From Malacoraja senta (Eukaryota), in NCBI GenBank assembly GCA_038087875.1, contig CM075978.1, positions 180,172,001 to 180,236,000 on the forward strand: DNA of 64,000 nt. Reading direction: 5' to 3'. The notes under the pieces are model-generated. The model was given only the letters and a program-made list of their open reading frames with translations. It was not told the origin of the DNA and made no database searches. The position numbers and the translations under genes were made by a program. Below are positions 1,204 through 43,440 of the stretch, piece after piece (position 1 is the first letter of the stretch; the number at the start of each line of letters is the position of its first letter).

Positions 1204-1256
1204 GTCACTACTACTCTGATAGCCATCCACAGTTTGATTTCCATTGTGATTTTGAG
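1204..1256 (+). CDS. Receptor gene 1, cytoplasmic linker exon (phase 1-0)
   Basis: ttttag|gt cac ... gag|gtataa; GHYYSDSHPQFDFHCDFE. Same position, phases and GH start as the gene 2 exon at 15639. Confidence 0.55.
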
Positions 1257-1334
1257 GTATAACATGACAGCTGAGGCCTATAACATTTCGTTGCATTCAA
1301 AGATACATTCCATTGTGTTTCACACCTTTAAGAG

Positions 1335-1496
1335 GATGAGAAGGTAATGTATAAAACACAACCTTATAACAATGGGTTATGCTTAAATCATCCATATGGT
1401 GCCCGCGGGCGTTCTTCATTTGGGCGACAATATCGATTGGCATCAAAGTACAACCTTCATGGGCAGCAACTCATACAAGCAAATCCGACAGGGTGA
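1335..1496 (+). CDS. Receptor gene 1, candidate terminal tail exon a (phase 0)
   Basis: Open 53 codons, DEKVMYK..NNGLCLNHP..SSF..QQLIQANPTG*. Aligns loosely with gene 2 exon a (DENIISF..NNNLNIP..TSF..HNLIYSKVKG). The acceptor is weak. Confidence 0.4.
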   Translation, partial: DEKVMYKTQPYNNGLCLNHPYGARGRSSFGRQYRLASKYNLHGQQLIQANPTG

Positions 1497-2051
1497 ATAA
1501 CTTCGTATTTTTCAAACAAGAGTGTACTTTACTTTAGACTTTTAGACTTTAGACTTTAGAGTGTCTCAAAGAAGGATTACATGTCAGCAAATGGCATGTG
1601 TTAATTCCATAGAATCTTAGAATGTCGTAGGAGAGAAATAAACTATTCTATCCGCGTTACCTCTTTATTTTCATAATACCTACAATGACTATTTTAAAGT
1701 TCCCGGTGAATCTACTTTCAGCATCCATTAATGAGTGCATCAGGGTTGTAAACACGAGAGAACATGGCGCGTGGATATCAATGTGGGAACTTTTGCAGTT
1801 ATCCGTTGATTGAAGTGAATATATATTTAACGGCTCCACATTGTGATAATGAAAGTTAATTTCACGTACATCTCAGAAACATTTAATCTCATAACCTTAA
1901 AAGTGTAAATCGTCTGATAATTTGGGCATTTCATTAATTGCGCAGATTGCGAATCCACATTGCTAGAATTAACAACAGATTGCGTACTCACTTTAACATG
2001 TTTAGCACTTTCCAACAATCAAACTTAATTTTCCGGGTCCATCTTTTATAG

Positions 2052-2722
2052 TGATACAACTAAATACAATTGGCGAATTAAAAGGCACATACATGAAGGA
2101 GCCGGGAAGATATCATCCTACCCAGCATCGATAAACAACGCCACAAAAATGCGAAAGCCAATAATGACCCCGAAGCACAAGCGTTCGGTAATTCACCGAA
2201 ATTCGGTAGTGGTGCCGAAGCCGAGGGATATTAAGCAGGGTGCAGTGATAACACTTTCAATCTACCAAGTATGCAATGGGGTCAAGGAACGAACGTTCAC
2301 GTCGCGGCCCTGTTTTCACCAATCTATCCACCACCACGCACAAGAAGCACAAGAAGCGCAAGACAGACACCATTGTATGCAGATGCCGAGAAGTGTGTTC
2401 AGCTCTGGTTGAACAACTTCTAATCTTGTGTGTGGTCTCGATAAGAAGAGTACGCAATGTTGGATGATTTCAGCCAAAGTACAATATGATCAACTCTATT
2501 TCCTAGCGACCGTTGATTTCCTGACAATTGTGCAGGCAGGTTCAACGTAGAATTTACCCCATGAGAATATAGGTTAAACGGTCCATCAGCGAATCTTAAA
2601 ATTATACTTTGCATTATCAGCATTTTTAATGGTTAATATTAAATGTTTGCTACTTTAATTCTACTATTCGTCTGCCCCCTTAAGCAGATTCCATTTACGT
2701 TCATATAAATGATCGACGATAA
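2052..2722 (+). pseudogene. Receptor gene 1, disrupted tail cassette c (2052-2187) and c2 (2688-2722, SIYVHI ITIM)
   Basis: DTTKYNWRIKR matches gene 3 NAVQYKWKIKK, but the frame is offset by one base from the acceptor. A TTCG|GT donor is present. The phase-1 exon at 2688 encodes DSIYVHINDRR*. Confidence 0.4.
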
Positions 2723-3193
2723 CGAAGAAAGCTAATGTTCTGTGGGCCAGGAATGATTAGTAGCACCGAAGATCAACACTAAGTGAAATCAGGGAAAGAA
2801 AGTTAATGAAGAATGGCAAAAGAAAATCTGATAACAATTTGCTACTTACAGATCAATGGAAGATCTCTAACTAAACTAAAGTAAAAAGACAGAATAGGCC
2901 ATCCCAGCAGTAGCGCGCAATAAAGTTTTCGAATAAACTACTGTTTTCTCAACTCATTAGAAGCAGTTCCCCAGCTTGAAGTAAAGCACTTTTATTCCCG
3001 TGCCCGTATATCATTAAAGATGGCTGATAGCAATTCCATATTTGTTTGCACGTAGGTGCAGTCTCATGGATTATTATGAATCCTGAAATGTATATACATT
3101 CTCTATGAGACTGGTAGTATTTTGTTTCAAAATCGTATTCTTTGTGCCACCAGAGGGTAATGAACTAATGAACAATATAAATTACTTTCACAG

Positions 3194-3343
3194 ACTAAAG
3201 ATGATCAATTCTACGTTGTATTATGTCGGTTTGCAGTTACTCAACTCCAATCAACAGTAACATTTAACCACCAAGCGGAACATGTACCTTATGCAGATGG
3301 AAATGTTTTAAAGAAGGAGCGAAACTGGGAATCGAAGCTGTAG
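3194..3343 (+). CDS. Receptor gene 1, candidate terminal tail exon d (phase 0)
   Basis: Acceptor attactttcacag is identical to the gene 2 exon at 19955. Open 49 codons, TKDDQFYVVL..EHVPYADGNVLKK..*. An ITIM-like LYYVGL sits in a shifted frame. Confidence 0.55.
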   Translation, partial: TKDDQFYVVLCRFAVTQLQSTVTFNHQAEHVPYADGNVLKKERNWESKL

Positions 3344-5479: not shown

Positions 5480-6005
5480 CAGATCTCCCATTACTAAACA
5501 CTTTAACACCCCCCCCCCCTCCCATTCCCATACTGCCTTTCTGTCCTGGGTCTCCTCCACTGTCAGAGTGCGGCTCAATGCAAATTGGAGGAAGAGCACC
5601 GAATATTTCGCTTGCGAAGTTTACCCCACAGCGGTATGAATATTGACCTCCAACTTCAAGTAACCCTTGCTTTCCCTCTCTCTCCATTCCGCTCCATTCT
5701 TACTTCTCAGACCAGTCTGAATATTCTCCTGATCAAATTTTACCCCTGTATGCTTCGTTGTCACCTTCCCCTAGCTAACAATGATCTATTCTACATTTTC
5801 CTTGAGCTTCATTCCCTTTGAAGTCTCACACTCACACTTCCATACCTATGTGTCGCCCTCTCTCCTGACCCACAGTCTGAAGAAGGGTCTCGACCCAAAA
5901 CGTCACCCATTCCTTCTATCTAGAGATGCCGCATGTTCCGCTGAGTTACTACAGCATTTTGTGTCAATCTTCCGTGTAAACCAGCATCTGCAGTTCCTTC
6001 CAATA
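5480..6005 (+). mobile_element. Penelope-like element 3' fragment (GIY-YIG C-terminus and terminal repeat)
   Basis: ctgggtctcctcca..aaattggaggaa..atatttcgctt aligns with 50827-50900, followed by the terminal repeat at 5875-6005. Confidence 0.75.
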
Positions 6006-8024: not shown

Positions 8025-8454
8025 TATATGTGTGTGTGGAAATGTATGTTATATATACACACACTTTACTTTTTTCCGTTTATTGTATTGCTTACAGTGT
8101 ACTATGTTTACATATTCTGTTGTGCTGCTGCAAATAAGAATTTTGTTGTTCCATCTGGGACATATGACAAAAAAACGCTCTTGACGTATTTTCTTCTGAG
8201 ACTGGCCACCTGGCTGAAGAATTGGAAATTACGAGAGGCACGGATAGTGTTGTTCGTCAGAACCTATGAAAGATAGGAAGGTATTGCTTTAACGGCAGAT
8301 GTGTAGAGTTATGCTGGGCCAGTTTTTTACGCAGAATGTGCCTGGAACGCGTTACCAGGGGGTGATGGAAAAATATACGACAGCAGTTTTTGAAGAGTCT
8401 TTTCGATAGGCACATAAATATGTACAAAGGAATTGCAGATGCTGGTTTAAACCG

Positions 8455-8548
8455 AAGATAGACACGAAAAGCTTGAGAACTCAGCGGGACAGGCAGCATC
8501 TCTGGAGAGATGGAATAGGTGACGTTTCGCGTCGAGACCCTTCTTCAG
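8455..8548 (-). mobile_element. Penelope-derived short repeat with hammerhead-like core
   Basis: Reverse complement reads CTGAAGA-AGGGTCTCGACGC-GAAAC-GTC. Confidence 0.7.
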
Positions 8549-9261
8549 AAATATTGCAGGCATGGTGGGATGTGGATCATATGCAGATAGAGGAGATTAG
8601 TTTATCTTCGCATCATGTTCCGCGTAGACATACTAGGCCGAGAAACCCGTTGCCGTGTTTAACTTGCATGTTTTATGATCTATTTGCTTTTGGAGACATG
8701 AGTTCGATTCTCACTACTTCATCTGCGAATTATAAATCTGCATATTTAAATTAAATTGTGTATATGCGTATACGCCGTCCTTGCTCTGTTCTTTTTAAAA
8801 TGCCTCTTATTTGTTCCATTAGGACGAAGCGTTATGCCCTCCGAATCAGATATGTTTTAGACTTATGCTTGTAATCCGCAAACACGAATGTGTCCATGCG
8901 AGCTTCTGCAAAGTTTCTATAAAAAAGATGGATCGAAACGAAGTTTTTTTTCTATCATCTACTGATTAACTAATCATCTACTGACTAACTAACTGACCAC
9001 TGCATTTCTAGCTTGACAAAATAGAAATAACACACAGCATGAGAATAGAACTGTTCTCGCGAGTCTGCTGGCGACGTCATGGAAAGGCTTGCGGTTGAAT
9101 GCTGTGCCTATCTGAAACAAACAAGTCACCGGACGGCTCGCGTTATCACTTTAGAAACTTAAGTGTAGAACAAGAAGTTTAATTTAAGACCATTTCTTAA
9201 AAGTCTGCCTCCGTCAATGAAACATTTCTAAGGTTGTACTGTAATCTTCATTATTTCGCAG

Positions 9262-9348
9262 GTAGACACAAAATGCTGGAGTAACACAGCGGGACAGGCA
9301 GCATCACTGGAGAGAAGGAATGGGTGACGTTTCGGGTCGAGACCCTTC
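9262..9348 (-). mobile_element. Penelope-derived short repeat, truncated within the CTGAAGA core
   Basis: Same family as 8455. The CTG of the core is missing. Confidence 0.65.
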
Positions 9349-9944
9349 TTTCCTTCTTTATTGTTCTTTCCTTCAATATTTCGTGTTCGTTCTGGGAAAA
9401 AAATAAATACGAGGCAAACTTCTTCATGACAATTAAATGGCTGATTTGTAAATGTTACCCTTTCTCTAAGAGCATGGAACTCTGTGCTATTACCTGGCGC
9501 ATTATAAGTCAAGATGAAACAAAATGACTCAAAAATATTTCTGTTTCATCATTCTTGCCTGCTTGGAGTACCGGGTATTTCATATGGTTGACGCGTTGTC
9601 ACTCTTGCTCAGAAGAGCAGAGACGTGTGGTGCCTCTCCGGCATAGAGGAGCTGAAACATATCCGCGAGGGTTACTGGAAAAACTACCCCTGTGCACTTG
9701 ACCTATGTGGGTGCGCTTAGTACATACTCCATACAACATTTGACAAGTTGTGATGATTCTATCGACAAAAAGAAGATATCGTCTGTAATTAGAGGTAACT
9801 TGCTGGCATTAACTATGGAGTTCATAGACTTTAGGAGCCGCTCGAATGGATAAGGTGGACTGGCATAATGTCGCAATTGATGGCCGTCGGGGATAGGCAT
9901 TTAGAGCATTTACATTTTCAGTCTACATCTAAATTCCAGTTTTG

Positions 9945-11507: not shown

Positions 11508-11562
11508 ATGTCGGCGAACGTTACAGTTTGGTCCGTGGCTCTTCTGGTTATACTTAGACAGG
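11508..11562 (+). CDS. Receptor gene 2, leader (signal peptide) exon
   Basis: ATG at 11508; MSANVTVWSVALLVILRQ-G; 55 bp, phase-1 GT donor. The gene 3 leader has the same size. Confidence 0.82.
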
Positions 11563-11735
11563 GTATAGTTAATTATGTGTGCCATTTCCGGTTTAAATAT
11601 TATTTTTCGAGGTCGGACCTGGTTTCGAGCTATTAGGTTAATCTATTAGGCCCTCGTGCTTTTCGACAGTTGGTTCTTCTTTTCTCTGTCCACTGTGTAC
11701 AACTGTTTCCATTGTTCTTGCTTATTTCCCATCAG

Positions 11736-12041
11736 CTACCGAAGTTTCTTCGAGCGGAGTATTGCAATTCCCTAACAACTTGGACGTTGGCGGCGGTGAA
11801 AATGCTATCATGTATTGCACATTTCCAATATCGCAAGACACTACTGACGTTAATTGGTGGAGGGACGGCATGAAGACATTCCTTGAACCGGACAGAAGAA
11901 AACAATTTGCGATAGATTCTGGAAGGGGAACCTTTACTCTCCAACATGTGCGTGTCGCTGACTCCGGCCTGTATTACTGTCAAGTAAAGTTTCAGCAACA
12001 AGTTATCGGGAATGGAAGTGGCTGCCTGATCACTGTATTGG
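11736..12041 (+). CDS. Receptor gene 2, V-type Ig domain exon with germline J-like G strand
   Basis: 306 bp, phase 1-1. Contains MYC, NWW, DSGLYYC and IGNGSGCLITVL, followed by g|gtgagt. Confidence 0.93.
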
Positions 12042-13167
12042 GTGAGTGTGTGTGTTAGGGAAATAAGCAATTTTCAGTTCTATGCTATTTGCAAAGTAAA
12101 ACTAGTCGCGGGGATAATATGAAAAATCGCCTGTTAATAAATACCCGGTAATAACAATTTATGATAAATGCATTACAGAGACTGGTAATTCAAAATGAAA
12201 CAATGCACAATGTGAATAATCATCAGGTCGGGTAGCACTCGTGGGACGCGTGGGTATTGAGGGTTATTCTGTTCATTGTACGGTACCTTTCGAGACGCCT
12301 TTTCATTGCCATCGGCGCAGCCCATTAATTTAGTGGTCGCGAATTTTAAGCCAATCTCCCAGGTGGATTTATCGCTAAGAACGGGTAAGTGCTTGAGATG
12401 TAAGAAATTCATTCGGCGGTGTGGTTAGAAATGCTTTGCAGTGAGATATTGAATTAATATTTCTTCTAGTTTGAATGGCTGGAGTATGATGTCTAGGTTT
12501 CTCATCACCAAGAAAAGAGAGTAGGGGCAATTTTAATGCGTCGATCGTAGAGTCTGCCATGCCTCTAATCTACATCAACAGCTTTAAAACCTCAGAAGAC
12601 CAATGTGCAGCTGCAACCCAAGGACCTTGGTGTTCCAAGATGCGGGACCTATCAGTTCCTCCAAGCTGACTTCAATGTAATTTTTTTGTTTGGAAACGCT
12701 TGACACTACTTATGTAATGCATAACTCCAGTCTATCCCACCAATTTGTCAAAGTACGGAGCAAAAAAGAGAAAAACAACATCTCAACTGAAATTCCCTCA
12801 TATCATTATTATTTAAAGTCGGGGAATAAATAGTAATATTTCTTTCATAGTTAAAGATTATCCTGATTAAGTGAATTAAGTCAAACATTTTAAAGAGATT
12901 GCTTGTAATAAACTGACAAAACAACCCAACAATCGACTCCCAGTCCAGTTAGACACCGACTGCAGCTCGAACGGAAGGAGTTCGCGTTAATAAATGCCAA
13001 ATATAGGACCTTTACGTGCAGACCTAAATTAGTAGAATCTGCACAGCGAGAAACAGAGCTTGTTCTATTCCCTCGTTTGGCTTCTGCAAGCTATCATCAT
13101 TAACGCCGATCTAGCGTTGTCGATTCACTGTCGCCAAGTTGGCACAACAGATGGAACTGATTTGTAT

Positions 13168-13350
13168 AGAGACACAAAATGCTGGAGTAACTCAGCGGGG
13201 CAGGCAGCATCTCTGGGTAGAAGGAATGAGTGACGTTTGGGGTCGAGACCCTTCTTCAAACCTCGATCCTTAACGTCACCCATTCATTCTCCGAAGAGAT
13301 GTTGCCTGTCCCGCTGAGTTACTCAGCATATGTTTGGTTTAAACCAGCAT
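13168..13350. repeat. Head-to-head inverted pair of Penelope-derived repeats in the V-C1 intron
   Basis: 13168-13237 is roughly the reverse complement of 13272-13335. Confidence 0.8.
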
Positions 13351-14101: not shown

Positions 14102-14395
14102 ATCCCCCAACTCCCTTGAAAATTGTTCCTGCTGAAGGACTTGGCTCTCCACGGAAACTTGTGTGCAAAACGGGCGCCTTTTATCCGGAGAAATTAGAAA
14201 TATTCTGGCTAAGAAATAACGAGGAAATTCGCACTGGAATCGAAACTGTGAAAAGACGGAGCGGAGGAGGATTGTTTGTGGCTTCTAGTTTTTTGGAAAT
14301 AACGCAGCCTGGCGAGGGCAAAGATATTTACACCTGTCTGGTATCACATATCTCCCTGAAGGTGGCGGCCAGTTTCAGTTACACCCTGGGCCAAG
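14102..14395 (+). CDS. Receptor gene 2, Ig C1-set exon (phase 1-1)
   Basis: 294 bp open; LVCKTGAFYPEKLEIFW..YTCLVSHISL; g|gtaag donor. Confidence 0.93.
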
Positions 14396-14935: not shown

Positions 14936-15034
14936 GAATTGATCGCAAACAGATTATCGTATATGCAGTAGGCGGATCAGTAATTTTAGTTCTGATTATA
15001 ATCGTGATAAGACTCAGTTTAAAGGTATGGTACG
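14936..15034 (+). CDS. Receptor gene 2, transmembrane exon (phase 1-1)
   Basis: 99 bp; GIDRKQIIVYAVGGSVILVLIIIVIRLSLKVWY; g|gtaagt donor. The membrane-spanning segment has no charged residue. Confidence 0.9.
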
Positions 15035-15638: not shown

Positions 15639-15682
15639 GCCATAACGTAACCTCTGTAGGAATACGTCAGAACGGGGAGCCG
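15639..15682 (+). CDS. Receptor gene 2, cytoplasmic linker exon (phase 1-0)
   Basis: 44 bp, GHNVTSVGIRQNGEP|gtaggt. Same length and donor as gene 3 40956-40999. Confidence 0.8.
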
Positions 15683-15783
15683 GTAGGTGATATGTTTCCT
15701 TTTGTTTCAAAATAGGGATTATTTGTAGCAGACGTATTATAAATCCGTTTTCTTCCATAGTATCTTGGAATACTCTAGGACAG

Positions 15784-15930
15784 GATGAAAACATTATTTC
15801 CTTTTCAGGTTACGTCAAGTATACATCCAATAATAATTTGAATATTCCTGTTGTATCTGCTTCAACATCTTTTGACAATTCCATGCCAGATCATAACCTA
15901 ATATATTCTAAAGTGAAAGGTGATGTTTAG
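15784..15930 (+). CDS. Receptor gene 2, candidate terminal tail exon a (ITIM LIYSKV)
   Basis: cag|DENIISFSGYVKY..DHNLIYSKVKGDV*, phase 0. The exact acceptor is uncertain. Confidence 0.55.
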   Translation, partial: DENIISFSGYVKYTSNNNLNIPVVSASTSFDNSMPDHNLIYSKVKGDV

Positions 15931-19009: not shown

Positions 19010-19153
19010 GTGAGACAAGCACCAATTGAACATACCACTGCCTATGCTACACTGAATTTAAGCGAGAGCAAAGGATTTTCAAATGGTCTACAAGAAGAAC
19101 AGCATGTCATCTATTCACAGGTAAAGCCCTTGGACAGCGTAATTAAGATATGA
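19010..19153 (+). CDS. Receptor gene 2, candidate terminal tail exon b (TAYATL + VIYSQV)
   Basis: ttttctaatag| phase 0, 47 codons then TGA. A homologue lies at 42246 in gene 3. Confidence 0.72.
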   Translation: MRQAPIEHTTAYATLNLSESKGFSNGLQEEQHVIYSQVKPLDSVIKI

Positions 19154-19378
19154 AATGATCATTGTTCCAAATGTAGTTGCTTTTTCCAAACTGCAGGGAA
19201 AATATAAGTGCACAATAGCAAATCTTAATTTAAGTAAAACCTATCACCCACTGCACATCAGAGCAAAAATATAATTTTCCTTTCCTTATTCGGGTTTAAA
19301 TTCAAATGTAAATTGTATGTGAAGAAACAAAGGGTGGGAAGCTAGGAACACACAAACCTACCCAGTTCTCATAATCAG

Positions 19379-19877
19379 AGCGAAACTAAATACAAATGCC
19401 AGACAATGACCTGGGAAAAGAGAGCAAACAAGACGTTCAAATTATCCACCGAATAGGGGACTCGTGTCAAAAACTGGGGACGCAGAGCCATAGGAAATAG
19501 TACCAACTTATATTCTATTGCATTTCGGTGCCACTGATGCAGCCGTGAGCCGAGGTGTCTATTGGAAAGGTACCGGTAGCTTCAGTCTGCGAACCACCTC
19601 TTGGGCTCTACAGGCGAAATAGATTCCCGCCAATCCCACAAAAGGGGCTTCGTATTATGCCAAATATTTAGTACTGCGGATACAATTTTGAGCATTCACC
19701 AATTCTCCTAACTTTCTTAATTACATCGAAGTTGACATAAAAGAAAAAGAAAATCATTCTTTTGTGGGACAAGAACGGCTCCTCGGGTTTAAACTCAATA
19801 TCAGGCAGAAAGGTATAGCCAAAAATAAATCTGTGCAAATCGATACCATTGTGAAAATTACAACATGGTTTGCATAA
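19379..19877 (+). pseudogene. Receptor gene 2, tail cassette c (19379-19527, internal stop/frameshift) and c2 (about 19693-19877, LNYIEV)
   Basis: SETKYKC aligns with gene 1 DTTKYNW and gene 3 NAVQYKW, and a TTCG|GT donor is present. The c2 motif LNYIEVD parallels gene 1 SIYVHIN. Confidence 0.38.
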
Positions 19878-19954
19878 AATTTTATTTTAAAGCAGTATGC
19901 TCAAATTTGTCACTGAATGATTGCCTAATCGCCGATCATTCATTACTTTCACAG

Positions 19955-20092
19955 GCTAAAAAAGGAGGACATGACAAGCTGACCTACGCAACTGTGCAAC
20001 ATCACACCCCCAAGAAAACATCAGCATCCAAACAACACAACAAATACACGGTGTACGCAGATGTGAATACTTCAAAAAAGACGTGTAACTGA
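19955..20092 (+). CDS. Receptor gene 2, candidate terminal tail exon d (ITIM LTYATV + ITSM TVYADV)
   Basis: attactttcacag| phase 0; AKKGGHDKLTYATVQ..YTVYADVNTSKKTCN*. Confidence 0.78.
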   Translation, partial: AKKGGHDKLTYATVQHHTPKKTSASKQHNKYTVYADVNTSKKTCN

Positions 20093-33110: not shown

Positions 33111-33789
33111 TTTTGTTATTCATCTTACCATAATAACTTTTCTTTGTGTGTTTAGAATGCGAACCTGAAATAACTAAAAGGAAACACATTTGCAAAGATG
33201 ATGCTTGAACAATTATAACTTTTAAAAAGTTACGTATCACATTACATTGACCGGGAACAAACTCGATGGACTATATACCTTGCTCATGCTGGTCTTTTAA
33301 AATTTGGCATCACAAGTTGTCAAGTGCTCAAATCTCCAAGAATGCAACAATTTTAAGTTAGCAATCATACTGTAAAGAATTCTATTTTTTGTCTCTGAAG
33401 TCTTTTGTGGTCTTGGACGTATTTCCGCTTTTTTTAAATAATTGATTCTATTTCTAACAATCCAAGCTTTTACTTTAATAAACACGTATCGACATTTGTT
33501 TGTTGAATTAACTTAGTTCTCGTGCCGATGTGCTCCCCTTCTCTTCAGTAATCCACTGCGGGTTTTGTAATGCACATTTGGCCCTTGAATACCTTTGCGC
33601 GAAAGTTGCTGTTGCAAATAACTGCGAATGTAACAGATGAATACTTAGGAGCAAGGAGCTAGTTAATTCCTGAATGTTAACAATGGAAAGAGGTTATAAT
33701 ATTTTTGCATATAGTCACTTATGGTACCACGGAGAAAGGTAGCAGAGGAATGAATGCATAATATATTGTAAGCGAAAAGAGTGCAATCA

Positions 33790-33922
33790 AAGATTCTGAA
33801 GAAGGGTTTCGGCCCGAAACGTTGCCTATTCCCTTCGCTCCATAGATGCTGCCGCACCCGCTGAGTTTCTCCAGCGCTTTTGTCTACCTTCGGTTTTCCA
33901 GCATCTGCAGTTCCTTCTTGAA
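33790..33922 (+). mobile_element. Penelope-derived short repeat with intact minimal hammerhead-like core
   Basis: CTGAAGA(33796)-A-GGGT-TTCG-GCCC-GAAAC-GTT. Confidence 0.72.
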
Positions 33923-34059
33923 CAATCAAAGATTCAGCTGACTATGGGTTTTCCTTTCTAAATTCCTTGTGTGCGGATTTAGATGATCCGAATCAATAGC
34001 GAAAAACTCTCAGTGGTACGCCGTCCAATTGCCACCCGGGAGCCGTTGGAGCTGTTGCA

Positions 34060-37000
34060 GTGGGAGGAGTAAAGTCCGGGCGGTGAGTACAAAACCCCAT
34101 CTCGGGGCTTCGTTCCACAGAGGCCCGGGAGCCGTTGGTAACGTTCCATTCGCAGTTTACAGTCCAAAACAAGAGGAAGCTGCTGATTGGTGGAAGCGGA
34201 CTAGAGGAAGCAGCTGATTGGGAGTCAGATCCCTGCTGATTTCTTCCAGCAGTTTGTATTGTACTTATATTGTATTTGTATTGTATCCTAGGTACAGGAG
34301 GAGTATGAGGGCCAGGGCAGTTTACTGTTCTGGATGTCAGATGTGGGAGGTCAAGGAATCTGATAGCCTTCCAGACGTCCACATCTACGCCAGGTGCATT
34401 GAGATGGGGCTCCTAAGGGACCGTATTAGGAACCTGGAGCAGCAGCTCGATGACCTCCGTCTTGTCAGGGAGAGCGAGGAAGTCATAGAGAGGAGTTATA
34501 GAGAGGTGGTCACTCCAAGACCACAGGAGGCAGGCAAGTGGGTCACGGTTAGGTGGGGCAAGGGGCAGAGGCAGGGACTAGAGAGTACCCCAGTGGCTGT
34601 ACACCTTGACAATAAGTACTCCTGTTTGAGTACTGTTGGGGGGGACCGCCTATCTGGGGGTTGCGACAGCGGCCAGGCCTCCGGTACAGAGACCGGCCCT
34701 GTTGCTCAGAAGGGTAAGGGAAAGAGGAGGAGGGCAGTAGTAATAGGGGACTCTATAGTTAGGGGGTCAGATAGTCGATTCTGTGGACGCAGTCCGGAGA
34801 CCCGGATGGTAGTTTGCCTCCCTGGTGCCAGGGTCTGGGATGTGTCTGAACGTGTCCAAGATATCCTGAAATGGGAGGGAGAAGAGCCTGAGGTCGTGGT
34901 ACATATAGGTACCAATGACATAGGTAGAAAAAGGGAAGAGGTCCTGAAAGGAGAAGTTAGAGAGTTAGGAAGAGAGTTAAGGAGAAGGACCGCAAAGGTA
35001 ACAATCTCGGGATTACTGCCTGTGCCACGCGACAGTGAGAGTAGGAATGGAGCGAGGTGGAGGATAAATGCGTGGCTGAACGACTGGTGCAGTGGGCAGG
35101 GATTCAAGTTTCTGGATCATTGGGACCTCTTTTGGGGAAGGTGTGACCTGTACAAAAAGGACGGGTTGCACTTGAACCCGAGGGGGACCAATATCCTGGC
35201 GGGGAGATTTGCAAAGGCTACTGTGGAGACTTTAAATTAGAACGGTTGGGGGGAGGGACTCAAATAGAGAAAGCTTGTAGACAGTGTGTGAGGCAGGAGG
35301 CAGAGAATGGAAGCACTCAGACCCAACAGGTAGGGGGGGAAGAAGAAAAAAAATAATAAACAGAGAATAAGAGGTGGTGGGTTTCTTAAAGGTGTGAGCA
35401 AAGAGACAGAGGGGTGTAAAATGAGGGTAGAAGCAATAGGTAGCAAGGTGAAAAGTAAACGTGGCAGGCAGACAAATCCAGTGCAAAAATCAAAAAGGGC
35501 CGCTTTTCAACATAATTGTATAAGGGGTAAGAGCGTTGTCAAAACAAGCCTGAAGGCTTTGTGTCTCAATGCAAGGAGCATTCGTAATAAGGTGGATGAG
35601 TTGAATGTGCAGATAGCTATTAATGATTAACGCCGGGAAGTAGTGTTAGGTAAATTGAATGGATTAAAGGCCGATAAATCCCCAGGGCCAGATAGGCTGC
35701 ATCCCAGAGTACTTAAGGAAGTAGCCCCAGAAATAGTGGATGCATTAGTGATCATTTTTCAAAACTCCTTAGATTCTGGAGTAGTTCCTGAGGATTGGAG
35801 GGTAGCTAATGTAACCCCCCTTTTTAAAAAGGGAGGGAGAGAGAAAAAGGGGAATTACAGACCAGTCAGTCTAACATCGGTAGTGGGGAAACTGCTAGAG
35901 TCAGTTATTAAAGATGGGATAGCAGCACATTTGGAAAGTGGTGAAATCATTATACAAAGTCAGCATGGATTTACGAAAGGTAAATCATGTCTGACGAATC
36001 TTATAGAATTTTTCGAGGATGTAACTAGTAGAGTGGATAAGGGAGAACCAGTGGATGTGTTATATCTGGACTTTCAGAAGGCTTTCGACCAGGTCCCACA
36101 TAAGAGATTAGTATACAAACTTAAAGCACACGGTATTGGGGGTTCAGTATTGATGTGGATAGAGAACTGGCTGGCAAACAGGAAGTAAAGAGTAGGTGTA
36201 AACGGGTCCTTTTCAGAATGGCAGGCAGTGACTAGTGGGGTACCGCAAGGCTCAGTGCTGGGACCCCAGCTATTTACAATATATATTAATGATTTGGACG
36301 AGGGAATTGAATGCAACATCTCCAAGTTTGCGGATGACACGAAGCTGGGGGGGGGGGGGGGGGCAGTGTTAGCTGTGAGGAGGATGCTAGGAGCCTGCAA
36401 AGTAACTTGGATAGGCTGGGTCAGAGGGCAAATGCATGGCAGATGCAGTATAATGTGGATAAATGTGAGGTTATCCACTTTGGTGGCAAAAACAGGAAAG
36501 TAGACTATTATCTAAATGGTGGCCGATTAGGAAAAGGGGAGATGCAACGAGACCTGGGTGTCATGGTACACCAGTCATTGAAAGTAGGCATGCAGGTGCA
36601 GCAGGCAGTGAAGAAAGCGAATGGTGTATTAGTATTCATAGCAAAAGGATTTGAGTATAGGAGCAGGGACGTTCTACTGCAGTTGTACAGGGTCTTGGTG
36701 AGACCACACCTGGAGTATTGCGTACAGTTTTGGTCTCCAAATCTGAGGAAAGAAATTTTTGCCATAGAGGGAGTACAGAGAAAGTTCACCAGATTGATTC
36801 CTGGGATGTCAGGACTTTCATATGAAGAAAGACTGGATAGACTCGGCTTGTACTCGCTAGAATTTAGAAGATTGAGGGGGGGATCTTATAGAAACTTACA
36901 AAATTCGTAAGGGGTTGGACAGGCTAGATGTAGGAAGATTGTTCCCGATGTTGGGGAAGTCCAGGACAAGGGGTCACAGTTTAAGGATTAAAGGGAAATC

Positions 37001-37274
37001 ATTTAGGACCGAGATGAGAAAAACATTTTTCACACAGAGAGTGGTGAATCTCTGGAACTCTCTGCCACAGAAGGTAGTTGAGGCCAGTTCATTGGCTATA
37101 TTTAAGAGGGAGTTAGATGTGGCCCTTGTGGCTAAAGGGATCAGGGGGTACGGAGAAAAGGCAGGTACAGGATACTGAGTTGGATGATCAGCCATGATCA
37201 TATTGAATGGCGGTGCAGGCTCGAAGGGCCGAATGGCCTACCGCTGCACCTATTTTCTATGTTTCTATGTTTCT
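34060..37274 (+). mobile_element. CR1 LINE, second family, with open ORF1 (ATG 34305 to 35240) and an internal deletion of most of the endonuclease at about 35630
   Basis: SGNH motifs in ORF1. ORF2 jumps from LNARSIRNKVDEL.. to REVVLGKLNGLKADKSPGPD. RT motifs and a (TTTCTATG)n tail are present. Confidence 0.92.
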
Positions 37275-37751
37275 AGTGGATGATGAAATCCTTATCAACG
37301 ACATCACTTGGCTATAATGTATCTCATTTAAATGCTGCAATTGAGGCTTGGGGTTATTGGCTGAAATGAATAGAAATTCGCAGCGTGACTAACTCAAAGA
37401 TCATCACACCCTTCTGCATTCAAGGTGGGATAATCTGTGACAGTAAGCACGAAATATACGAGGCTGAATATTTGTCTGCCCTGTCATCTTATGCTCCGGT
37501 AGGACAAAGTCTCAATTTGAGAATGAAGTAAAGGTAAATGGATTTCAATATGTGTTGTCCAAACACTGTGCACCAACAATGGCTGGGAGAGAAATCATTT
37601 TGACGTAGGAAATCGAAGAAAACATATTTCCTATATCGTATTCGCTGAAAATATAAATATACTCAAAATGCATCACGATGCCTTAGTCATGTGATTTACG
37701 GCGTCGGAGTCACACGCTTCAGGCATTCTATGAAAACCTATTTATTGCAGT

Positions 37752-37806
37752 ATGCCGGTGAAAGCAATGGTTCGGTACATGGGTCTTCTTGCTTTAGTTT
37801 GTCAAG
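37752..37806 (+). pseudogene. Receptor gene 3, leader exon
   Basis: MPVKAMVRYMGLLALVCQ-G, 55 bp, phase 1. Confidence 0.75.
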
Positions 37807-38012
37807 GTATACTTAGTTTCTGTACCGATTTCGCTAATCAAATCATATTTGTCAATATTTTACACTAGTATGCCACAGCAAATTAAATTTACAACGTTTC
37901 TGCAATTGCCTTACCACTATTTCCTAATTGTTTTGTATTTGTGTATCCATTGGCTCTTTTTCTTGGTGCTGTATGTGCAACTGTTTTCATCATATTTACT
38001 TATTTCTGCCAC

Positions 38013-38317
38013 TGACAAAAGCAACTTCGAGCAAAGTAGAACAATTCCCCGCATTCCTGAAATTCTCCAGAGGCACAAATGCATCCATGTTCTGCAAATT
38101 TCCAATATTAAAAGAAACCGCTGACGTTTCTTGGTGGAGAGGGGGCGAGAAGACATTTATGGAACCGGACAACAGAAAGCAATTCAAAGTAGACAAGGGA
38201 AGCAGTACGTTTACTTTGCTGAATGTGAGTGTCGCAGACTTGGGGATGTATTACTGTCGAGTGAATATCAACTGCAACTTATCGGCAATGGAACTGGCTC
38301 CCAGCTAATTGTGTTAA
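38013..38317 (+). pseudogene. Receptor gene 3, V exon with a 1-nt deletion near 38264 and acceptor AG>AC
   Basis: About 58% aa identity to the gene 2 V domain (54/93 by hand). The G strand YQLQLIGNGTGSQLIVL lies in a shifted frame, giving a stop at 38306-38308. Confidence 0.88.
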
Positions 38318-39577
38318 GTAAGTTTATTTGTTACGGGATATGTTCATCTGTTGCAATGTAACTAAAGCTTGCTGATGGAGAAAATATTAATCTTATCCAG
38401 TTCTATAATTTTAATGGTTACTTCCGAGGTGAAAATCTGAAATATAGGGAACATACTGAAAAATATACCATGCGTCGGTCAATATACGTGCAGCGAGAGT
38501 TCTGTTATAGTTTTCTTTTATTTACTCCGGGTTATCTTACAAAGTCATAGTGCGTTACCCTGGTTATTGCTCTTGTAAATTGGCAGGTCAATTTATATTT
38601 TGACCTCCAGCTTTTCAAATACCCAACCAAATTCACGTTACTCCGAATTTCCAGAAAGTTGCAAATTTCCCACCCGACAAACTTTCCCATCAACTAATAA
38701 CGGAGGAGAAATGGATCTCACAGTTTTGAGGTGGATAATTTTGTTTACACTTTCACAGTCTCCAGGAAAGTTCATGGAATGAAAAAAGAAAAAGAAGAAC
38801 TACAACTGAAATTCTCCGATATTATTTCTTATTTAAAATAGATCCATGGTTATATCATCGTATAGAATAGAGTTTTGCTTGGTAATCATTTATATGGCAC
38901 AGGGAGTAAAAGGTAATATCGCTTTATTAATTAATAATGATCGTACAATAAGATGTTATTACATCAATGAAAGAAAGTAAAAATGCTTAAAAACAAACGA
39001 CATTAAGGAGATTACGCAATGAATTGACAAAAAAAGGTACAATTAACTCTCCCGCTCGCTAAATATTACTGACAGTGGCTCCAGCACAAATGGAACCATG
39101 TTCATTAATGTCTTGTTAATAAAATATGAAATGAGAAACAGAGTTTGCTCGGTTCATCCTTGCGTGTTTTTTGAGAAAATCAATTGTTGTCGCCGATGTA
39201 CTTCTGCCATTCAGTGCAGTCCATTTTCTATAACTACCACATGCACATAAGAAAGAGCAAATGTTCAGAAGAATTGCGTGATTTTGAATTCAACATAAAG
39301 CACTGTCGCGGAATCTTACCAAGCAATACATGTGTCACATTCCTTCATAATAATCGCGGGAACCCCGCGGGGCAGCAGTACTAAAGTTTACTCCATTCAT
39401 GCTTTGTTTCAATTGCACTACTTATCTTGATATCCTCCGTAAAATAATTTATAACAAAATTATAAACTCAACAAACAACCACACGGATAACAGGAGGCAA
39501 CAGCAACTGCTCAGCGACAATTATGTTCATTGAAATAAAATATATTTTACAGTTTCACGCTTTTTATATTGTTCCAG

Positions 39578-39861: not shown

Positions 39862-39907
39862 GTAAGCCGGGAGGAATTTAACGCAGACTCCAGCCGCCGA
39901 GAAATAC

Positions 39908-40005
39908 AATCTGAACAAGGGTCTCGATCCGATATGTCTCCCATTCCTCTCTCCATAGATGTTGCCTGTCCCGCTGAGTTACTCCAGCTCTTTTGTGTCT
40001 ATTTT
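39908..40005 (+). mobile_element. Degenerate Penelope-derived short repeat in the gene 3 intron
   Basis: ctgaacaagggtctcgatccgatatgtc..gctgagttactccagc; the core is mutated. Confidence 0.65.
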
Positions 40006-40379
40006 CTAATACAATTAGAGAGTTGTGCAAACACAAAAATCCAGTTCCTTTTCATATTTACTGGAACCTGCGGTGGCGGGTCCAGGGTGTCAGATCCAGA
40101 ATATAGAATGCATTCTGACTTTTTAAACTGTTGTCAAACTACCGGGCGTAGTTTTGTAAAATGAAATTGAACAGTCATCTTAACTTAATAACCAAACCTC
40201 TGCAAAGAGCCACCGTATAATGTGATCTGTTCTATAAATTCGCCATTACCGTACAATGCGTGCCATGTGGCAGTCATAAAATCTTTGTACAGAAAATATT
40301 GAACGATTGCTCTGCCTTCTTGTCTCGGTCCCTGTATATGTATTTATGTTTCACCGTTCTCATTTTTCGCCATATCCAG

Positions 40380-40490
40380 AAACCCCTGAAACCACGGACA
40401 AAACTCTAATTCTCCGATGTGTCGTGGGCGGACTGTCAATTGTTGTCCTGCTTATAATTTTGACAATATTCGCATTAAAGGCATAACGAG
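40380..40490 (+). pseudogene. Receptor gene 3, TM exon with Arg and an in-frame TAA after the TM
   Basis: ETPETTDKTLILRCVVGGLSIVVLLIILTIFALKA*. TAA at 40484-40486 aligns with CAA in gene 1. Confidence 0.85.
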
Positions 40491-40955
40491 GTAAGAACCT
40501 TGCATAACTTTTCATTTCATGTATCCGTAGATAGAAAAGCGAATGGTGCATTCTGAGAAGTATTGAAACAAGAAGCCAAAGCAAAACTAATTATTAGTTG
40601 TAAGTTAAACTAAAATTATTTCCCCTGCCCTTTCGAATTATTCAATCATCTTTCGATTGTGTGTTTTTCAAACATCTGTATTGTTAGCGTGTTGATTTGC
40701 TTTAAAGTCAGATTTTGAAGCATGGGTTATTTGGTGTAGACGTTCGCTTCCTCCGGTTGTGCAGATCTAACGCGGGTGGTATATATGAAGGTAATGCACA
40801 ACACATTACATTGTGGCGATGGTACTCCGATACGTATACGGGATTGTCGCTGCCTTCAAGGATCCATAGGCAGTAGATGTGATTATAATGTAATGCGTAA
40901 CTTACATTTTCATGACATTAAAATGTTATTCGTGATTTCTCTTTTATTCATGTAG

Positions 40956-43440
40956 GTATTAATGCAAACCCCGTGGAAGCAAGTCATAGCGTAGAACCGG
41001 TAGGTGAAGCTATTCTTCTTGTTTCCAAGAGGGATGGACGAGTACAGAAATTATACGAGCAGCAGAGAATATATCAGTTTCATTCCATATAATTTTATAA
41101 CATTGCAGCGCAGAAGGAAACCATTTTGCCTGTCACCTCTAATATTGGAAGGGGCGCAGCGAGTAAACCTGCAATCTCTTAGTTCCGTCCTGATCGGGTT
41201 CAATCCTAATCTCGTACGGTACTGTGGGTGATTTGCAGTTTATTCCTGTGTGCTTTTCGGCCGGATGCTCTACTCCCCTTGTATCCCAAAGTGATGCGGA
41301 TTGCTCGGTTACTTCGCTACTATAAATTGCGACCTAAGAATGAAAGTACATGTAAGTGCATAAGGGCAGACGACAAACTCGTCCCACTACCAGGTGCTCA
41401 CATAGGCCAGGTTGCCTGGGAGATACAGGGGGCACTGTTATCGCTGCCGGAAATCTACAGGGAAGCCGGAAACGGCGATAACGGAGACGGAATAAGATGG
41501 CGGGAAGTGAGAAATTGATCGCATTTGGAAGAGAGATTTTTCAAATGAATCGCAAGCTACAATATTAATAAACAAGTTGAACACTGGCACTTTGAATCCT
41601 CACGGGAATGACATTTTGAGAAATATAATTGAATGCAGTTCAAATGGTATCGTGCCCCTTTTTTGCAATCATTCTGTATGTTTATGTTTCAGACTCACTC
41701 TTTAAAGTACTACATCAGACCCTCTGCTAACTGTGCTGAATATCACTTTCTAATAGGTGTAGCGGCAGATTTTTATATCGTTCAAGAAATTACTCCCTCT
41801 CGCCGCTAAATGGACTGCATAATTAAGGAGAATGTCGTTTACGCATGCGAGCTCTCCATCAGAGCCCTTCATAGCTTCTTCACAGATAAATCTTCATAAC
41901 ACAGTCTTTTGATTAATAGATTGTTTATTGTTGATAAAAAACCTTGGTACATCCAAACTTCTTCCGACTCACACACAAAAATCTTCATCGAACTCCAGCA
42001 TATCGCTTTAATGGTTAGAAAACTCCTCGTGTCTCCATTACACTTCGCATGATCAAAGGGTATGCCTTCCCCATACTGGTCCAAAACTAAACTAAAAACT
42101 AAGCTTCTGGGGAAGAAACCTAGCTCCAAACACGCCCTAAAATACGTCATAAATCCCACCCTCAATATAACGGGCAGTCTAAAATTTAAAGACACATGCC
42201 ATCATTAATGACACACAAAACAAGCTCAAATGGCCACTACAATAGGTTCGGGAAACGTCAAGTGAAGATGCCTCTGCCTACGCAACACTAATCTTGAGAT
42301 AGGGCAAAAGAAATACCAAATATCGACGCAACGAAGAGCATGTTGTTCATGTCGAGATAAAGGCAAAGTGTTTGCACGAAAAGCATTCCAAGTAAACATC
42401 AGATTAAAGGAAATTATTTTTGTTGATTATGAAGCAACGTGAACATAATTTTGATCTTGTACGACTGTGGAAAAGCGCGTAATGACGAATTTTGAATTGT
42501 GGCATTGAAACCAGATAGAGCAGAACGACAGATTCAGCTGCATGAGACCATCGCACTGCAAAATTACCTTTATCTTTATTCTCGGATTTTAATGTAGAAT
42601 GCTGTCCAATATAAATGGAAAATTAAGAAACAGACAAGGTACCCGCCAACAGGTTTTTCCACCCAGCGGTCATATCCAGTGCCAGGAAATATGAGAAATT
42701 CAGACAATGACAGGAGAAACAGAGTGAAATCTGAATTCGGGATATCCACCTCAATAGGGGACAGGTGGCAGGATGGCACTGGACCTCAGAGAGGTTTATT
42801 ATATTATTTACAGAGTACTATGTTTACTTATTCTGTTGTGCTGCTGCAGCTAAGAATTTCTTAGTTCTATCTGGGACATATGAGAAGCACTCTTGACTCT
42901 TGACAGTGTTTCCATATTATCTAACGAAGATCACACAGTGACAGAGATATTACGGCTTCTCGTCTATACACAAGGTTAAAAAAATCCTGGCCTTCGGTGC
43001 TGTCAGTGTGAAGGTTGAACGTTATTTGGTGCGTCCTCGCGGGTTTCCCGAGGTGCTCCGAATACTTCGCACATCCCGAATCACGTGAGGGGTGGTAGGC
43101 TAATTAGACATTTAAAATGTCCCGTGTTTAGGCAAGTGGTATAATCTAGGCGTGAGTGAAGTGGTGATGGCAATGTGGAGAGAATAAAATGGGAATATTT
43201 TTAATGGATATTTGTGTTACACTGTTCGCTGGACCACGAAAGGCTCCGCAGAAGACTGGATAAATAATATGAACATAAACTATTCTACGTTATCTGCAAT
43301 CTGGAAATTATAATTGTTGGCTATATTCCAATTGTGTTGAAAATTGATTGCTTTCCTAAATCACTGGACAATGGACTAACAGGCAATATTGCATTTCTTT
43401 CACAGACCAAATGAGGCGGAGATGACCAGATGACACGCCT
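40956..43440 (+). pseudogene. Receptor gene 3, linker exon (40956-40999) and tail cassettes a (41114-), b (42246-42395), c (42598-42739), d (43406-, truncated)
   Basis: b reads VRETSSEDASAYATLILR*..EEHVVHVEIK. c is open, but its donor is GG instead of GT. d retains tttcacag|acc aaa and then stops. Confidence 0.62.

What the first reader, a model, noticed from the sequence alone, without database searches (positions are those of the whole stretch)
1204..43440. The tail-cassette order is shared by all three paralogues, but different cassettes survive in each
The order linker-a-b-c-(c2)-d recurs in gene 1 (1204, 1335, degenerate about 1690, 2052, 2688, 3194), gene 2 (15639, 15784, 19010, 19379, 19693, 19955) and gene 3 (40956, 41114, 42246, 42598, 43406). 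The b-to-c spacing is similar in genes 2 and 3 (369 vs 352 bp), and genes 1 and 2 have an identical 13-nt d acceptor (attactttcacag). Gene 2 keeps a, b and d open with motifs. Gene 1 keeps a and d open, but with eroded motifs (LIQ for LIY; LYYVGL out of frame). Inference: the array predates the gene triplication and was pruned differently in each paralogue, a possible subfunctionalisation of signalling. The a-type homologies are weak and were aligned by eye.
Basis: partly seen in the sequence, partly recalled or inferred. Interest (0 to 1): 0.7.

Follow-up and report, generated by a model that had tools for sequence, protein, structure and literature searches.

The report
Skate receptor triplets share tail exons
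Three neighbouring skate immune-receptor genes share the same ordered tail exons because they are old tandem copies of one inhibitory receptor gene; one copy keeps the full inhibitory tail, one has lost its signalling motifs and one is a dead gene, which is ordinary for such receptor families.

Summary
The window holds three + strand V(J)-C1-TM immunoglobulin-type receptor genes. They belong to a cartilaginous-fish family that databases label "SIRP-alpha-like" or "NCR3LG1-like".

**What is real.** Collinear tail homology exceeds shuffled controls:
- Linker, b and d are true family exons. Ray, shark and chimaera proteins carry them in the order TM-linker-b-d. In gene 2 they splice in frame to a four-tyrosine ITIM/ITSM-type tail.
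- "a" and "c" are real homologous blocks, but nothing shows they are exons.
- "c2" and gene 1's "linker" (1204) have no homologue.

- Gene 1's "a" (1335) does not match gene 2's a.
It has an early stop.
- Gene 1 has no b.
- Gene 2's c start (19379) lies about 85 nt from the homologous position.

**State of each gene.**
- Gene 3 is a pseudogene. It has frameshifts in V and C1, stops in the TM exon and in a, b and d, and a truncated d.
- Gene 1 keeps only a motif-eroded d. Its nearest relatives have short tails.

**Verdict.** The array does predate the triplication, trivially so. The "different pruning" is one intact inhibitory gene, one copy stripped of its motifs and one pseudogene. It is not an array of alternative terminal cassettes. 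Other windows of this scan noted the same family elsewhere in this genome. Interest is low to moderate.

The parts
213..509 (+). Gene 1 C1-set exon (open; the V exon lies upstream of the window)
   Evidence: Pfam C1-set E=1e-12. tblastn with relatives. Boundaries read from the sequence.
792..884 (+). Gene 1 transmembrane exon, uncharged helix, donor AATG|gtgaga, leaves phase 1
   Evidence: tblastn hit DKNLIIGCAVGVLAILVLAIILIRHQLKAQNG. Frame check.
1333..1496 (+). Its 3' end (about 1449-1494) aligns by position with the linker of genes 2 and 3. The ancestral acceptor reads ttg and the ancestral donor GT reads AC. The frame stops at 1494-1496.
   Evidence: MAFFT alignment A1. No similarity to gene 2 a (z -0.7). 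The linker match is not significant alone (z 1.5). Frame check.
1605..1740 (+). TAA at the second codon of the frame homologous to gene 2, with further stops after it.
   Evidence: blastn 64% over 136 nt, 51 bits against a shuffle maximum of 32.6. z 8.4. Alignment.
2063..2169 (+). Gene 1 copy of the conserved block 'c'; non-coding by the available evidence
   Evidence: Local alignments to 42608-42711 and 19340-19411. z 9.4 and 4.8. Gaps are not multiples of three.
3194..3343 (+). Gene 1 d exon relic. It is open, and both tyrosines are kept, but the motifs are eroded (QFYVVL, VPYADG). The acceptor 13-mer lies at 3181-3193.
   Evidence: blastn 38 bits. 13-mer. Module HMM gives only E=0.6 against 2e-13 for gene 2 d.
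11508..12045 (+). Gene 2 leader (from 11508, MSANVTVWSVALL...) and V(J) exon (about 11735-12042); boundaries approximate
   Evidence: tblastn. Pfam V-set E=3e-9.
14102..14395 (+). Gene 2 C1-set exon
   Evidence: Pfam C1-set E=6e-12. 68% identical to Mobula P0005. Splice sites.
14936..15034 (+). Gene 2 transmembrane exon (leaves phase 1)
   Evidence: tblastn. Splice and frame check.
15639..15682 (+). Gene 2 linker exon: 44 nt, phase 1 to 0, encodes HNVTSVGIRQNGEP, strong pyrimidine tract, donor CCG|gtaggtga
   Evidence: Frame check. Relatives carry ..INTSSLDRCQNEEP at this position. Acceptor pyrimidine content 0.89.
15784..15919 (+). Gene 2 block 'a': 136 nt, open after the linker, contains LIYSKV, weak acceptor. 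Including it shifts the frame and gives a stop 6 codons into b or 1 codon into d. AATAAA at 15978. Its status as an exon is unproven.
   Evidence: Frame models. Acceptor pyrimidine content 0.50 with a competing AG. No relative's tail maps here. The linker-a spacer is as conserved as a itself.
19010..19120 (+). Gene 2 b exon: 111 nt, phase 0 to 0, double-tyrosine module (TAYATL ... VIYSQ)
   Evidence: tblastn 59% identity to P0005, E=3e-9. Module HMM E=8.5e-15. Depth 15 of 93 tails.
19302..19469 (+). Gene 2 copy of the conserved intronic block 'c'.
   Evidence: blastn 46.8 bits to 42605-42770. Alignments.
19955..20092 (+). Gene 2 d exon, last coding exon, double-tyrosine module (LTYATV ... TVYADV), stop at 20090-20092
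   Evidence: tblastn E=7e-10 to P0005. Module HMM E=2e-13. Depth 26 of 93 tails.
37752..38319 (+). Gene 3 leader and V(J) exon, with a 1-nt deletion near 38266 that shifts the frame
   Evidence: tblastn splits into two frames. Alignment to the intact orthologous contig L001.
39578..39861 (+). Gene 3 C1 exon with a 13-nt deletion between 39676 and 39677 (frameshift)
   Evidence: Alignment to L001, whose C1 exon is open. tblastn in two frames.
40380..40490 (+). Gene 3 transmembrane exon with an in-frame TAA at 40484-40486
   Evidence: tblastn hit ...FALKA*RG. Frame model.
40956..40999 (+). Gene 3 linker exon relic: 44 nt, same length and same donor (CCG|gtaggtga) as gene 2
   Evidence: blastn 59.7 bits for the block. 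z 17. tblastn P0011 E=9e-5.
41114..41182 (+). Gene 3 relic of block 'a' (KETILPVTSNIG..., stop after 22 codons, no motif)
   Evidence: z 5.4. Translation. Alignment.
42246..42356 (+). Gene 3 b exon relic (VRETSSEDASAYATLILR*): in-frame TAG, second tyrosine lost, donor gt reads at
   Evidence: blastn 54 bits. tblastn P0015 E=0.003. Frame model.
42605..42770 (+). Gene 3 copy of the conserved block 'c'
43406..43448 (+). Gene 3 d exon relic. It reads ACC AAA TGA, a stop at codon 3. It is cut off at about 43448, where an 88%-identical copy of 21508-23149 begins.
   Evidence: blastn 51 bits. Self-blast 21508-23149 ~ 43449-45143. Sequence.

Best explanation
The three genes are old tandem duplicates of one inhibitory V(J)-C1-TM receptor gene of the cartilaginous-fish 'SIRP-alpha-like' family.

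**Ancestral tail.** The cytoplasmic tail is built from consecutive small exons:
- a 44-nt linker that converts phase 1 to phase 0;
- one or more phase-0 double-tyrosine module exons (b);
- a terminal double-tyrosine exon (d).

Because whole genes were duplicated, every tail feature lies in the same order in each copy.

**Present state of each copy.**
- Gene 2 keeps the intact tail with four tyrosines, including LTYATV (ITIM) and TVYADV (ITSM). By inference from the motifs, it signals by recruiting SH2-domain phosphatases.
- Gene 1 has no b, an a relic full of stops, probably a disabled linker splice pair, and a d exon whose tyrosine motifs no longer fit the consensus. It is best read as a copy without inhibitory motifs.
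- Gene 3 is a pseudogene, broken in every exon class.

**Blocks a and c.** These are islands of residual or possibly regulatory homology, not demonstrated exons. Block c2 and gene 1's exon at 1204 are chance picks.
For: **Shown**
- Domain identities.
- Collinear homology above shuffled controls.
- The gene 2 model TM-linker-b-d is in frame with good splice sites.
- Its protein matches Mobula, Hypanus and Heterodontus proteins exon for exon.
- Tails of 93 relatives map only to linker, b and d.
- The module HMM hits only gene 2 b (E=8.5e-15) and gene 2 d (E=2e-13) strongly. Gene 3 b scores 0.3 and gene 1 d scores 0.6.
- Gene 3 lesions: a 13-nt deletion and a 1-nt deletion relative to an intact orthologous contig, a TAA in the TM exon, stops in a, b and d, and a truncated d.
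- Gene 1 has no b relic.
- Its nearest C1 relatives, Pristis P0170 (76% identity) and Hemitrygon P0171, are annotated with short tails lacking motifs.
- The spacer between linker and a is as conserved as a itself.

**Inferred**
- Phosphatase recruitment by the gene 2 tail, from established knowledge of ITIM and ITSM motifs.
- The actual tail of gene 1.
Against: - No transcript data were available, so use of a as an alternative exon in gene 2 cannot be excluded. It is open, in frame after the linker, carries LIYSKV, and is followed by AATAAA at 15978.
- Gene 1's d keeps a perfect acceptor 13-mer, a 49-codon open frame and both tyrosine codons. This could mean it is still used through some phase-correcting exon.
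- The short tails of P0170 and P0171 are database predictions and could be truncated models.
- The C1 tree rests on 100 columns with moderate support.
- Block c is conserved in all three genes without an explanation.
Confidence: 0.75

Rival explanations
1. The tail region is an array of alternative terminal or cassette exons (linker, a, b, c, c2, d) that existed before the triplication. Each paralogue kept a different subset, so that signalling was divided between the copies.
For: - Blocks cluster by letter rather than by gene.
- a is open with an ITIM in gene 2 only.
- RefSeq records in two species carry proteins that lack b-type exons (P0153, P0183).
- The copies do differ in motif content.
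Against: - c2, gene 1's 1204 exon and gene 1's 'a' have no homologues.
- c keeps no frame and carries no motif in any copy.
- No relative's protein contains a, c or c2.
- Linker, b and d are consecutive in-frame exons, not alternatives.
- Gene 3 is broken in its ectodomain exons too, so its tail state is decay, not specialisation.
Confidence: 0.1
2. Block a is a genuine alternative exon of gene 2. It would be a 136-nt frame-shifting exon, or an alternative last exon using AATAAA at 15978. It would swap the four-tyrosine tail for a short single-ITIM tail, much as the 53-nt exon 7 sets the long and short tails of CEACAM1. The relics in genes 1 and 3 would be its decayed copies.
For: - a is open for 45 codons in the frame set by the linker, contains LIYSKV, and has a donor-like G|gtgatg.
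- AATAAA lies 48 nt after the read-through stop.
- The a block is the best-conserved tail block between genes 1 and 2 (51 bits).
Against: - The acceptor is weak: pyrimidine content 0.50, with a competing AG 5 nt upstream.
- The supposed intron before it is equally conserved.
- The copies in genes 1 and 3 carry early stops.
- a is absent from all 93 related tails, including multi-isoform RefSeq genes.
- With a followed by b and then d, the stop would lie far upstream of the last junction. By established knowledge that would mark the transcript for nonsense-mediated decay.
Confidence: 0.13
3. The tail similarities are chance alignments made by eye in AT-rich sequence.
Against: - Four collinear gene 2-gene 3 blocks score 47-60 bits against a shuffle maximum of 34.
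- The gene 1-gene 2 blocks for a and d also exceed all shuffles.
- Protein-level matches to other species support b and d.
Confidence: 0.02

Closest known systems
Cartilaginous-fish V(J)-C1-TM receptors that RefSeq annotates as 'tyrosine-protein phosphatase non-receptor type substrate 1-like' or 'natural cytotoxicity triggering receptor 3 ligand 1-like' (for example Mobula hypostoma P0005, Hypanus sabinus P0152, Heterodontus francisci XP_067906045)
   Same: - The domain order is the same.
- C1 identity is 57-69%.
- The tail exons come in the same order: linker (..CQNEEP), b (..TAYASLN..IIYSQ) and d (..KLTYAAL..LYADVNTSKK).
- Family members exist with full tails, short tails and skipped exons.
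   Different: The window adds a skate trio in which one member is intact, one has lost its motifs and one is a pseudogene. Blocks a and c are not represented in any annotated relative.
Mammalian SIRP family (SIRP-alpha inhibitory, SIRP-beta activating, SIRP-gamma short tail)
   Same: - A V domain with a J-like strand plus a C1-set domain.
- A four-tyrosine inhibitory tail made of two double-tyrosine modules.
- Paired paralogues with similar ectodomains and different tails.
- SIRP-alpha and SIRP-gamma chains are among the PDB sequence hits (2wng E=1.8e-13, 4i2x).
   Different: - There is one C1 domain rather than two.
- The PDB hits to SIRP are no better than those to Ig constant regions or UrIg2, so orthology is not shown.
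- No copy in this window has a charged transmembrane residue.
- The ligand is unknown.
CEACAM1 long and short tails, and CEACAM paired receptors
   Same: In CEACAM1 a small exon of non-3n length sets the frame of the ITIM/ITSM exons (own knowledge). Duplicated paralogues diversify their tails by exon loss and splicing (papers PMC5856374 and PMC5112662, taken from their titles and abstracts and respectively).
   Different: Here the frame-shifting candidate (a) has no transcript or cross-species support. The ectodomain family is unrelated.

Membership tests
Cartilaginous-fish SIRP-alpha-like V(J)-C1-TM receptor family | V-set domain ending in a J-like G-x-G-x-x-L-x-V strand, encoded in one exon | tested here: met
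   Gene 2 reads ..IGNGSGCLITV and gene 3 reads ..IGNGTGSQLIV. Pfam V-set. Gene 1's V exon is outside the window.
Cartilaginous-fish SIRP-alpha-like V(J)-C1-TM receptor family | A single C1-set domain closely related to family members | tested here: met
   Pfam C1-set E=1e-12 and 6e-12. Identity to ray and shark members is 57-76%. All three genes fall inside the batoid clade, with SH-aLRT support 96.
Cartilaginous-fish SIRP-alpha-like V(J)-C1-TM receptor family | Tail made of a linker exon plus double-tyrosine module exons in the order linker-b-d | tested here: met
   Met for gene 2. Gene 3 has all three as broken relics. Gene 1 has only an eroded d and a doubtful linker relic.
Mammalian SIRP-alpha (PTPNS1) proper | Ectodomain of one V domain and two C1-set domains | tested here: not met
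   Only one C1 exon lies between the V and TM exons in genes 2 and 3, and the same holds in the related proteins.
Mammalian SIRP-alpha (PTPNS1) proper | Four cytoplasmic tyrosines in ITIM-type motifs that bind SHP-1 and SHP-2 | tested here: inconclusive
   Gene 2 has TAYATL, VIYSQA, LTYATV and TVYADV. LTYATV and TVYADV fit the ITIM and ITSM consensus. Binding cannot be tested here.
Mammalian SIRP-alpha (PTPNS1) proper | Orthology or specific sequence relationship, and CD47 binding | not testable with these tools
   phmmer against PDB ranks SIRP-alpha (E=1.8e-13) below Ig mu and alpha constant regions and UrIg2. No synteny or ligand data were available.
Alternative-tail switch of the CEACAM1 long/short type | An exon of non-3n length whose inclusion changes the frame of downstream ITIM exons | tested here: inconclusive
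   Block a is 136 nt, and in silico its inclusion ends the protein 6 codons into b. No evidence was found that it is spliced.
Alternative-tail switch of the CEACAM1 long/short type | Transcript isoforms with and without the exon | not testable with these tools
   No skate transcript data could be reached. Genomic DNA of relatives could not be fetched.

The most novel reading that the evidence does not exclude
The linker-to-a island, conserved in all three paralogues, may encode an alternative 3' end. Either a read-through of the linker donor or inclusion of the 136-nt exon a would switch gene 2 from a four-tyrosine inhibitory tail to a short tail or a single-ITIM tail. Gene 1 would then have fixed the short form. 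Ray proteins that read through the same donor (P0011, P0155, P0158) keep a similar peptide, VGE..LVS.RD. This hints that the short form is old.
Probability: 0.15. Interest if true: 0.5.

Novelty: new member of a known kind. Interest (0 to 1): 0.3.

Why it matters
The result gives a clean exon-level model of the inhibitory tail of a large, inconsistently named receptor family of sharks, rays and chimaeras. I found no paper describing this family. It also shows three outcomes within one skate gene cluster: an intact inhibitory receptor, a copy stripped of its motifs, and a pseudogene. This is the expected birth-and-death pattern for paired immune receptors, so it is useful for annotation but not surprising. 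The modular phase-0 tyrosine exons, which some RefSeq proteins of two species lack, suggest that the number of motifs can be tuned by splicing.

Tried and rejected
- **Default self-blast** at 1e-5 saw only the V and C1 exons as paralogous. Relaxed scoring was needed to see the tails.
- **Genomic DNA of orthologous loci** could not be fetched. The Mobula and Hypanus assemblies and one Logan contig are too large to serve. Cross-species footprinting of a and c was therefore impossible. Only contig L001 (gene 3 V to C1) was obtained.
- **No skate protein** of this family appeared in either word-index search. No annotated model of the window's own genes was available.
- **Hidden tyrosine modules in gene 1.** I looked at 2149-2423, which reads KQGAV..LSIYQV and PLYADAEK. 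The module HMM puts them at noise level (E about 9), so this was rejected.
- **Block c as a duplicated 'TM end plus linker'.** In gene 3 it translates as RVKSEFGISTSIGDRWQD. The tblastn E-values are only 0.1-0.6 over 93 non-independent queries, so this was rejected as unsupported.
- **Codon-position pattern** of the differences was uninformative for a, b and d.
- **Rfam**: no hits in the window.
- **NCBIfam**: no hits for three related proteins.
- **Literature searches** found no description of this family. UrIg and UrIg2 (PMC12227049) are different multi-C-domain molecules, and that paper does not mention ITIM.

Full report
**What the window is.** Composition, the absence of Rfam hits, and the exon-like open frames point to a vertebrate genome. 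Earlier scan notes name it a skate. Three + strand genes each have a V-set exon and a C1-set exon (Pfam), followed by an exon for an uncharged transmembrane helix. Default self-blast detects only the V and C1 exons as paralogous, at 69-72% identity.

**Is the tail homology real?** I used relaxed blastn (match 1, mismatch -1, word 7) with 100 dinucleotide shuffles per pair. The shuffle maxima were 30-34 bits.

| Pair | Coordinates | Block | Bits |
|---|---|---|---|
| Gene 2 vs gene 3 | 15540-15802 ~ 40870-41131 | linker plus start of a | 59.7 |
| Gene 2 vs gene 3 | 19005-19126 ~ 42241-42362 | b | 54.0 |
| Gene 2 vs gene 3 | 19302-19469 ~ 42605-42770 | c | 46.8 |
| Gene 2 vs gene 3 | 19847-19998 ~ 43297-43447 | d | 51.1 |
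| Gene 1 vs gene 2 | 1605-1740 ~ 15753-15884 | a | 51.1 |
| Gene 1 vs gene 2 | 3119-3336 ~ 19879-20100 | d | 38.3 |
| Gene 1 vs gene 3 | 3122-3199 ~ 43332-43411 | d acceptor region | 36.8 |
| Gene 1 vs gene 3 | 1601-1664 ~ 41079-41140 | a (borderline) | 31.1 |

All the blocks are collinear. The 13-mer ATTACTTTCACAG is exact before d in genes 1 and 2, and has one mismatch in gene 3.

The significant pairs are the same-letter ones:
- L, genes 2-3: z 17.
- a, genes 2-3: z 5.4.
- b, genes 2-3: z 19.
- c, all three genes: z 4.8-9.4.
- d, all three genes: z 5.2-15.5.

The only significant cross-letter pair is gene 1 '1690' with gene 2 a (z 8.4). So the blocks group by letter, not by gene, and the 'chance' and 'independent duplication' readings fail.

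- Gene 1's 'linker' at 1204 has no homologue.
- Gene 1's 'a' at 1335 does not match a in the other genes (z -0.7 and 1.1).
- In the three-way alignment, the 3' end of the gene 1 open frame (about 1449-1494..LIQANP) lines up with the linker of genes 2 and 3 (..IRQNGEP..SHSVEP). In gene 1 the acceptor tag reads ttg and the donor GT reads AC. This match is positional only and is not significant alone (z 1.5).
It has TAA at its second codon.
- Gene 1 has no b relic (z 0.9 and 0.3).
- c2 has no homology anywhere.
- Block c is a genuine three-way block: 2063-2169, 19302-19469 and 42605-42770. The '369 vs 352' spacing is therefore not a like-for-like comparison.
- 'LYYVGL out of frame' is accurate as a reading. 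In the homologous frame, though, gene 1 keeps both d tyrosines as QFYVVL and VPYADG. Both miss the ITIM/ITSM consensus.

**What the blocks are.** A full-library phmmer search with gene 2's C1 exon, and two follow-up searches, recovered a family found in rays, sharks and chimaeras. Sources name it inconsistently: 'SIRP-alpha-like', 'NCR3LG1-like', 'TCR beta-like' and others.

The canonical tail of the family reads TM, then linker (..INTSSLDRCQNEEP), then b (..EHTTAYASLN...EERIIYSQ), then d (TKRNGADKLTYAALQ...HALYADVNTSKKL). Gene 2 matches this exon for exon. Its model is in frame with good splice sites:

| Exon | Coordinates | Note |
|---|---|---|
| C1 | 14102-14395 | |
| TM | 14936-15034 | leaves phase 1 |
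| linker | 15639-15682 | 44 nt, phase 1 to 0 |
| b | 19010-19120 | 111 nt, phase 0 to 0 |
| d | 19955-20092 | ends in the stop codon |

The resulting tail carries TAYATL, VIYSQA, LTYATV and TVYADV.

Three further results bear on which blocks are exons:
- Tails of 93 relatives, searched by tblastn, cover only linker, b and d. None covers a, c or c2.
- An HMM of the double-tyrosine module built from the relatives finds gene 2 b (E=8.5e-15) and gene 2 d (E=2e-13). Gene 3 b (0.3) and gene 1 d (0.6) score only weakly. Nothing else scores.
- Some database proteins lack b-type exons: Mobula birostris isoform X2 (P0153) and Heterodontus isoform X3 (P0183). Heterodontus also has an extra module exon between b and d.

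So the phase-0 module exons do behave as cassettes, by being skipped. They are not alternative terminal exons.

**Status of a and c.** In gene 2, a (15784-15919, 136 nt) is open after the linker and contains LIYSKV. Including it would end the protein 6 codons into b or 1 codon into d. AATAAA follows at 15978.

Against a being an exon:
- Its acceptor is weak, with a competing AG upstream.
- The spacer between linker and a is as conserved as a itself, at 55-60%.
- The copies in genes 1 and 3 carry early stops.
- No relative's protein contains it.

Block c keeps no reading frame between copies and carries no motif. I treat both a and c as conserved non-exonic islands. I leave about 13-15% for a being a real alternative exon.

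**State of the three genes.**
- *Gene 3* is a pseudogene. Compared with L001, an 88%-identical contig from another skate sample whose C1 exon is open, it has a 1-nt deletion in V and a 13-nt deletion in C1. It also has TAA at 40484-40486 in the TM exon, stops in a, b and d, and a lost b donor. Its d is cut at about 43448, where an 88% copy of 21508-23149 begins.
- *Gene 1* has open C1 and TM exons but no usable ITIM exon. Spliced directly, TM to d gives a stop after one codon. The only in-frame routes use unsupported acceptors at 1204 or 1333.
- On a C1 tree of 100 columns with moderate support, gene 1 is nearest to Pristis P0170 and Hemitrygon P0171, both annotated with short tails lacking motifs. 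Gene 2 is sister to a stingray clade that carries linker-b-d tails. This suggests the triplication is older than the skate-ray split.

**Comparison with known systems.** The architecture and the four-tyrosine tail work like SIRP-alpha. The trio resembles paired-receptor clusters such as SIRP alpha, beta and gamma. However, there is one C1 domain, not two. PDB sequence hits to SIRP are no better than hits to Ig constant regions or UrIg2. I therefore do not file these genes as SIRP orthologues.

The UrIg paper (PMC12227049) describes different molecules. My literature searches found no description of this family. Earlier scan notes on other windows of this genome reached the same reading of the family, including a member with a fossil ITIM.

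**Verdict.** The shared order is real and ancient, but it reflects consecutive exons of duplicated genes. The differences between copies amount to one intact gene, one gene that has lost its motifs and one dead gene.

Noticed in passing
window 24600-37300 and 51100-64000: Several copies, on both strands and 70-95% alike, of a CR1-like LINE. Its ORF1 carries a GDSL-esterase domain, and it also has endonuclease and reverse transcriptase domains. The longest open frame is 869 aa, at 59742-62351 on the - strand.
   Followed up: partly
window 21508-23768 vs 43449-46226: A duplicated segment, 85-88% identical, lies downstream of gene 2 and of gene 3. It is much younger than the genes themselves (about 70%). 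In gene 3 it starts inside the d exon, so a later rearrangement or insertion truncated that exon.
   Followed up: partly
window 5872-6000, 8427-8550, 9260-9350, 13170-13364, 33795-33917, 39907-40007, 51061-51158: A short interspersed repeat of about 90-125 nt, with copies on both strands at 76-94% identity. One copy lies just after the C1 exon of gene 3.
   Followed up: no
window 46300-47200: A GC-rich (64%) degenerate tandem-repeat region with long proline/threonine-rich open frames on both strands.
   Followed up: no
window 15683-15712, 41000-41091; proteins P0011, P0155, P0158: Ray proteins that read through the linker donor end in VGE..LVSERD-like peptides. These resemble the read-through translations of gene 3 (VGEAILLVSKRDGR..) and gene 2 (VGDMFPFVSK*). 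This hints at an old short-tail form made by not splicing the linker donor.
   Followed up: partly
window 1520-1550: A small tandem repeat (TTTAGAC units) is inserted in gene 1 between the linker-like stretch and the a relic. It is absent from genes 2 and 3.
   Followed up: no
window 12764-12884 vs 38782-38967: A conserved island (70-80% identity) lies in the V-C1 intron of genes 2 and 3. It is better conserved than the exons. Its function is unknown.
   Followed up: no
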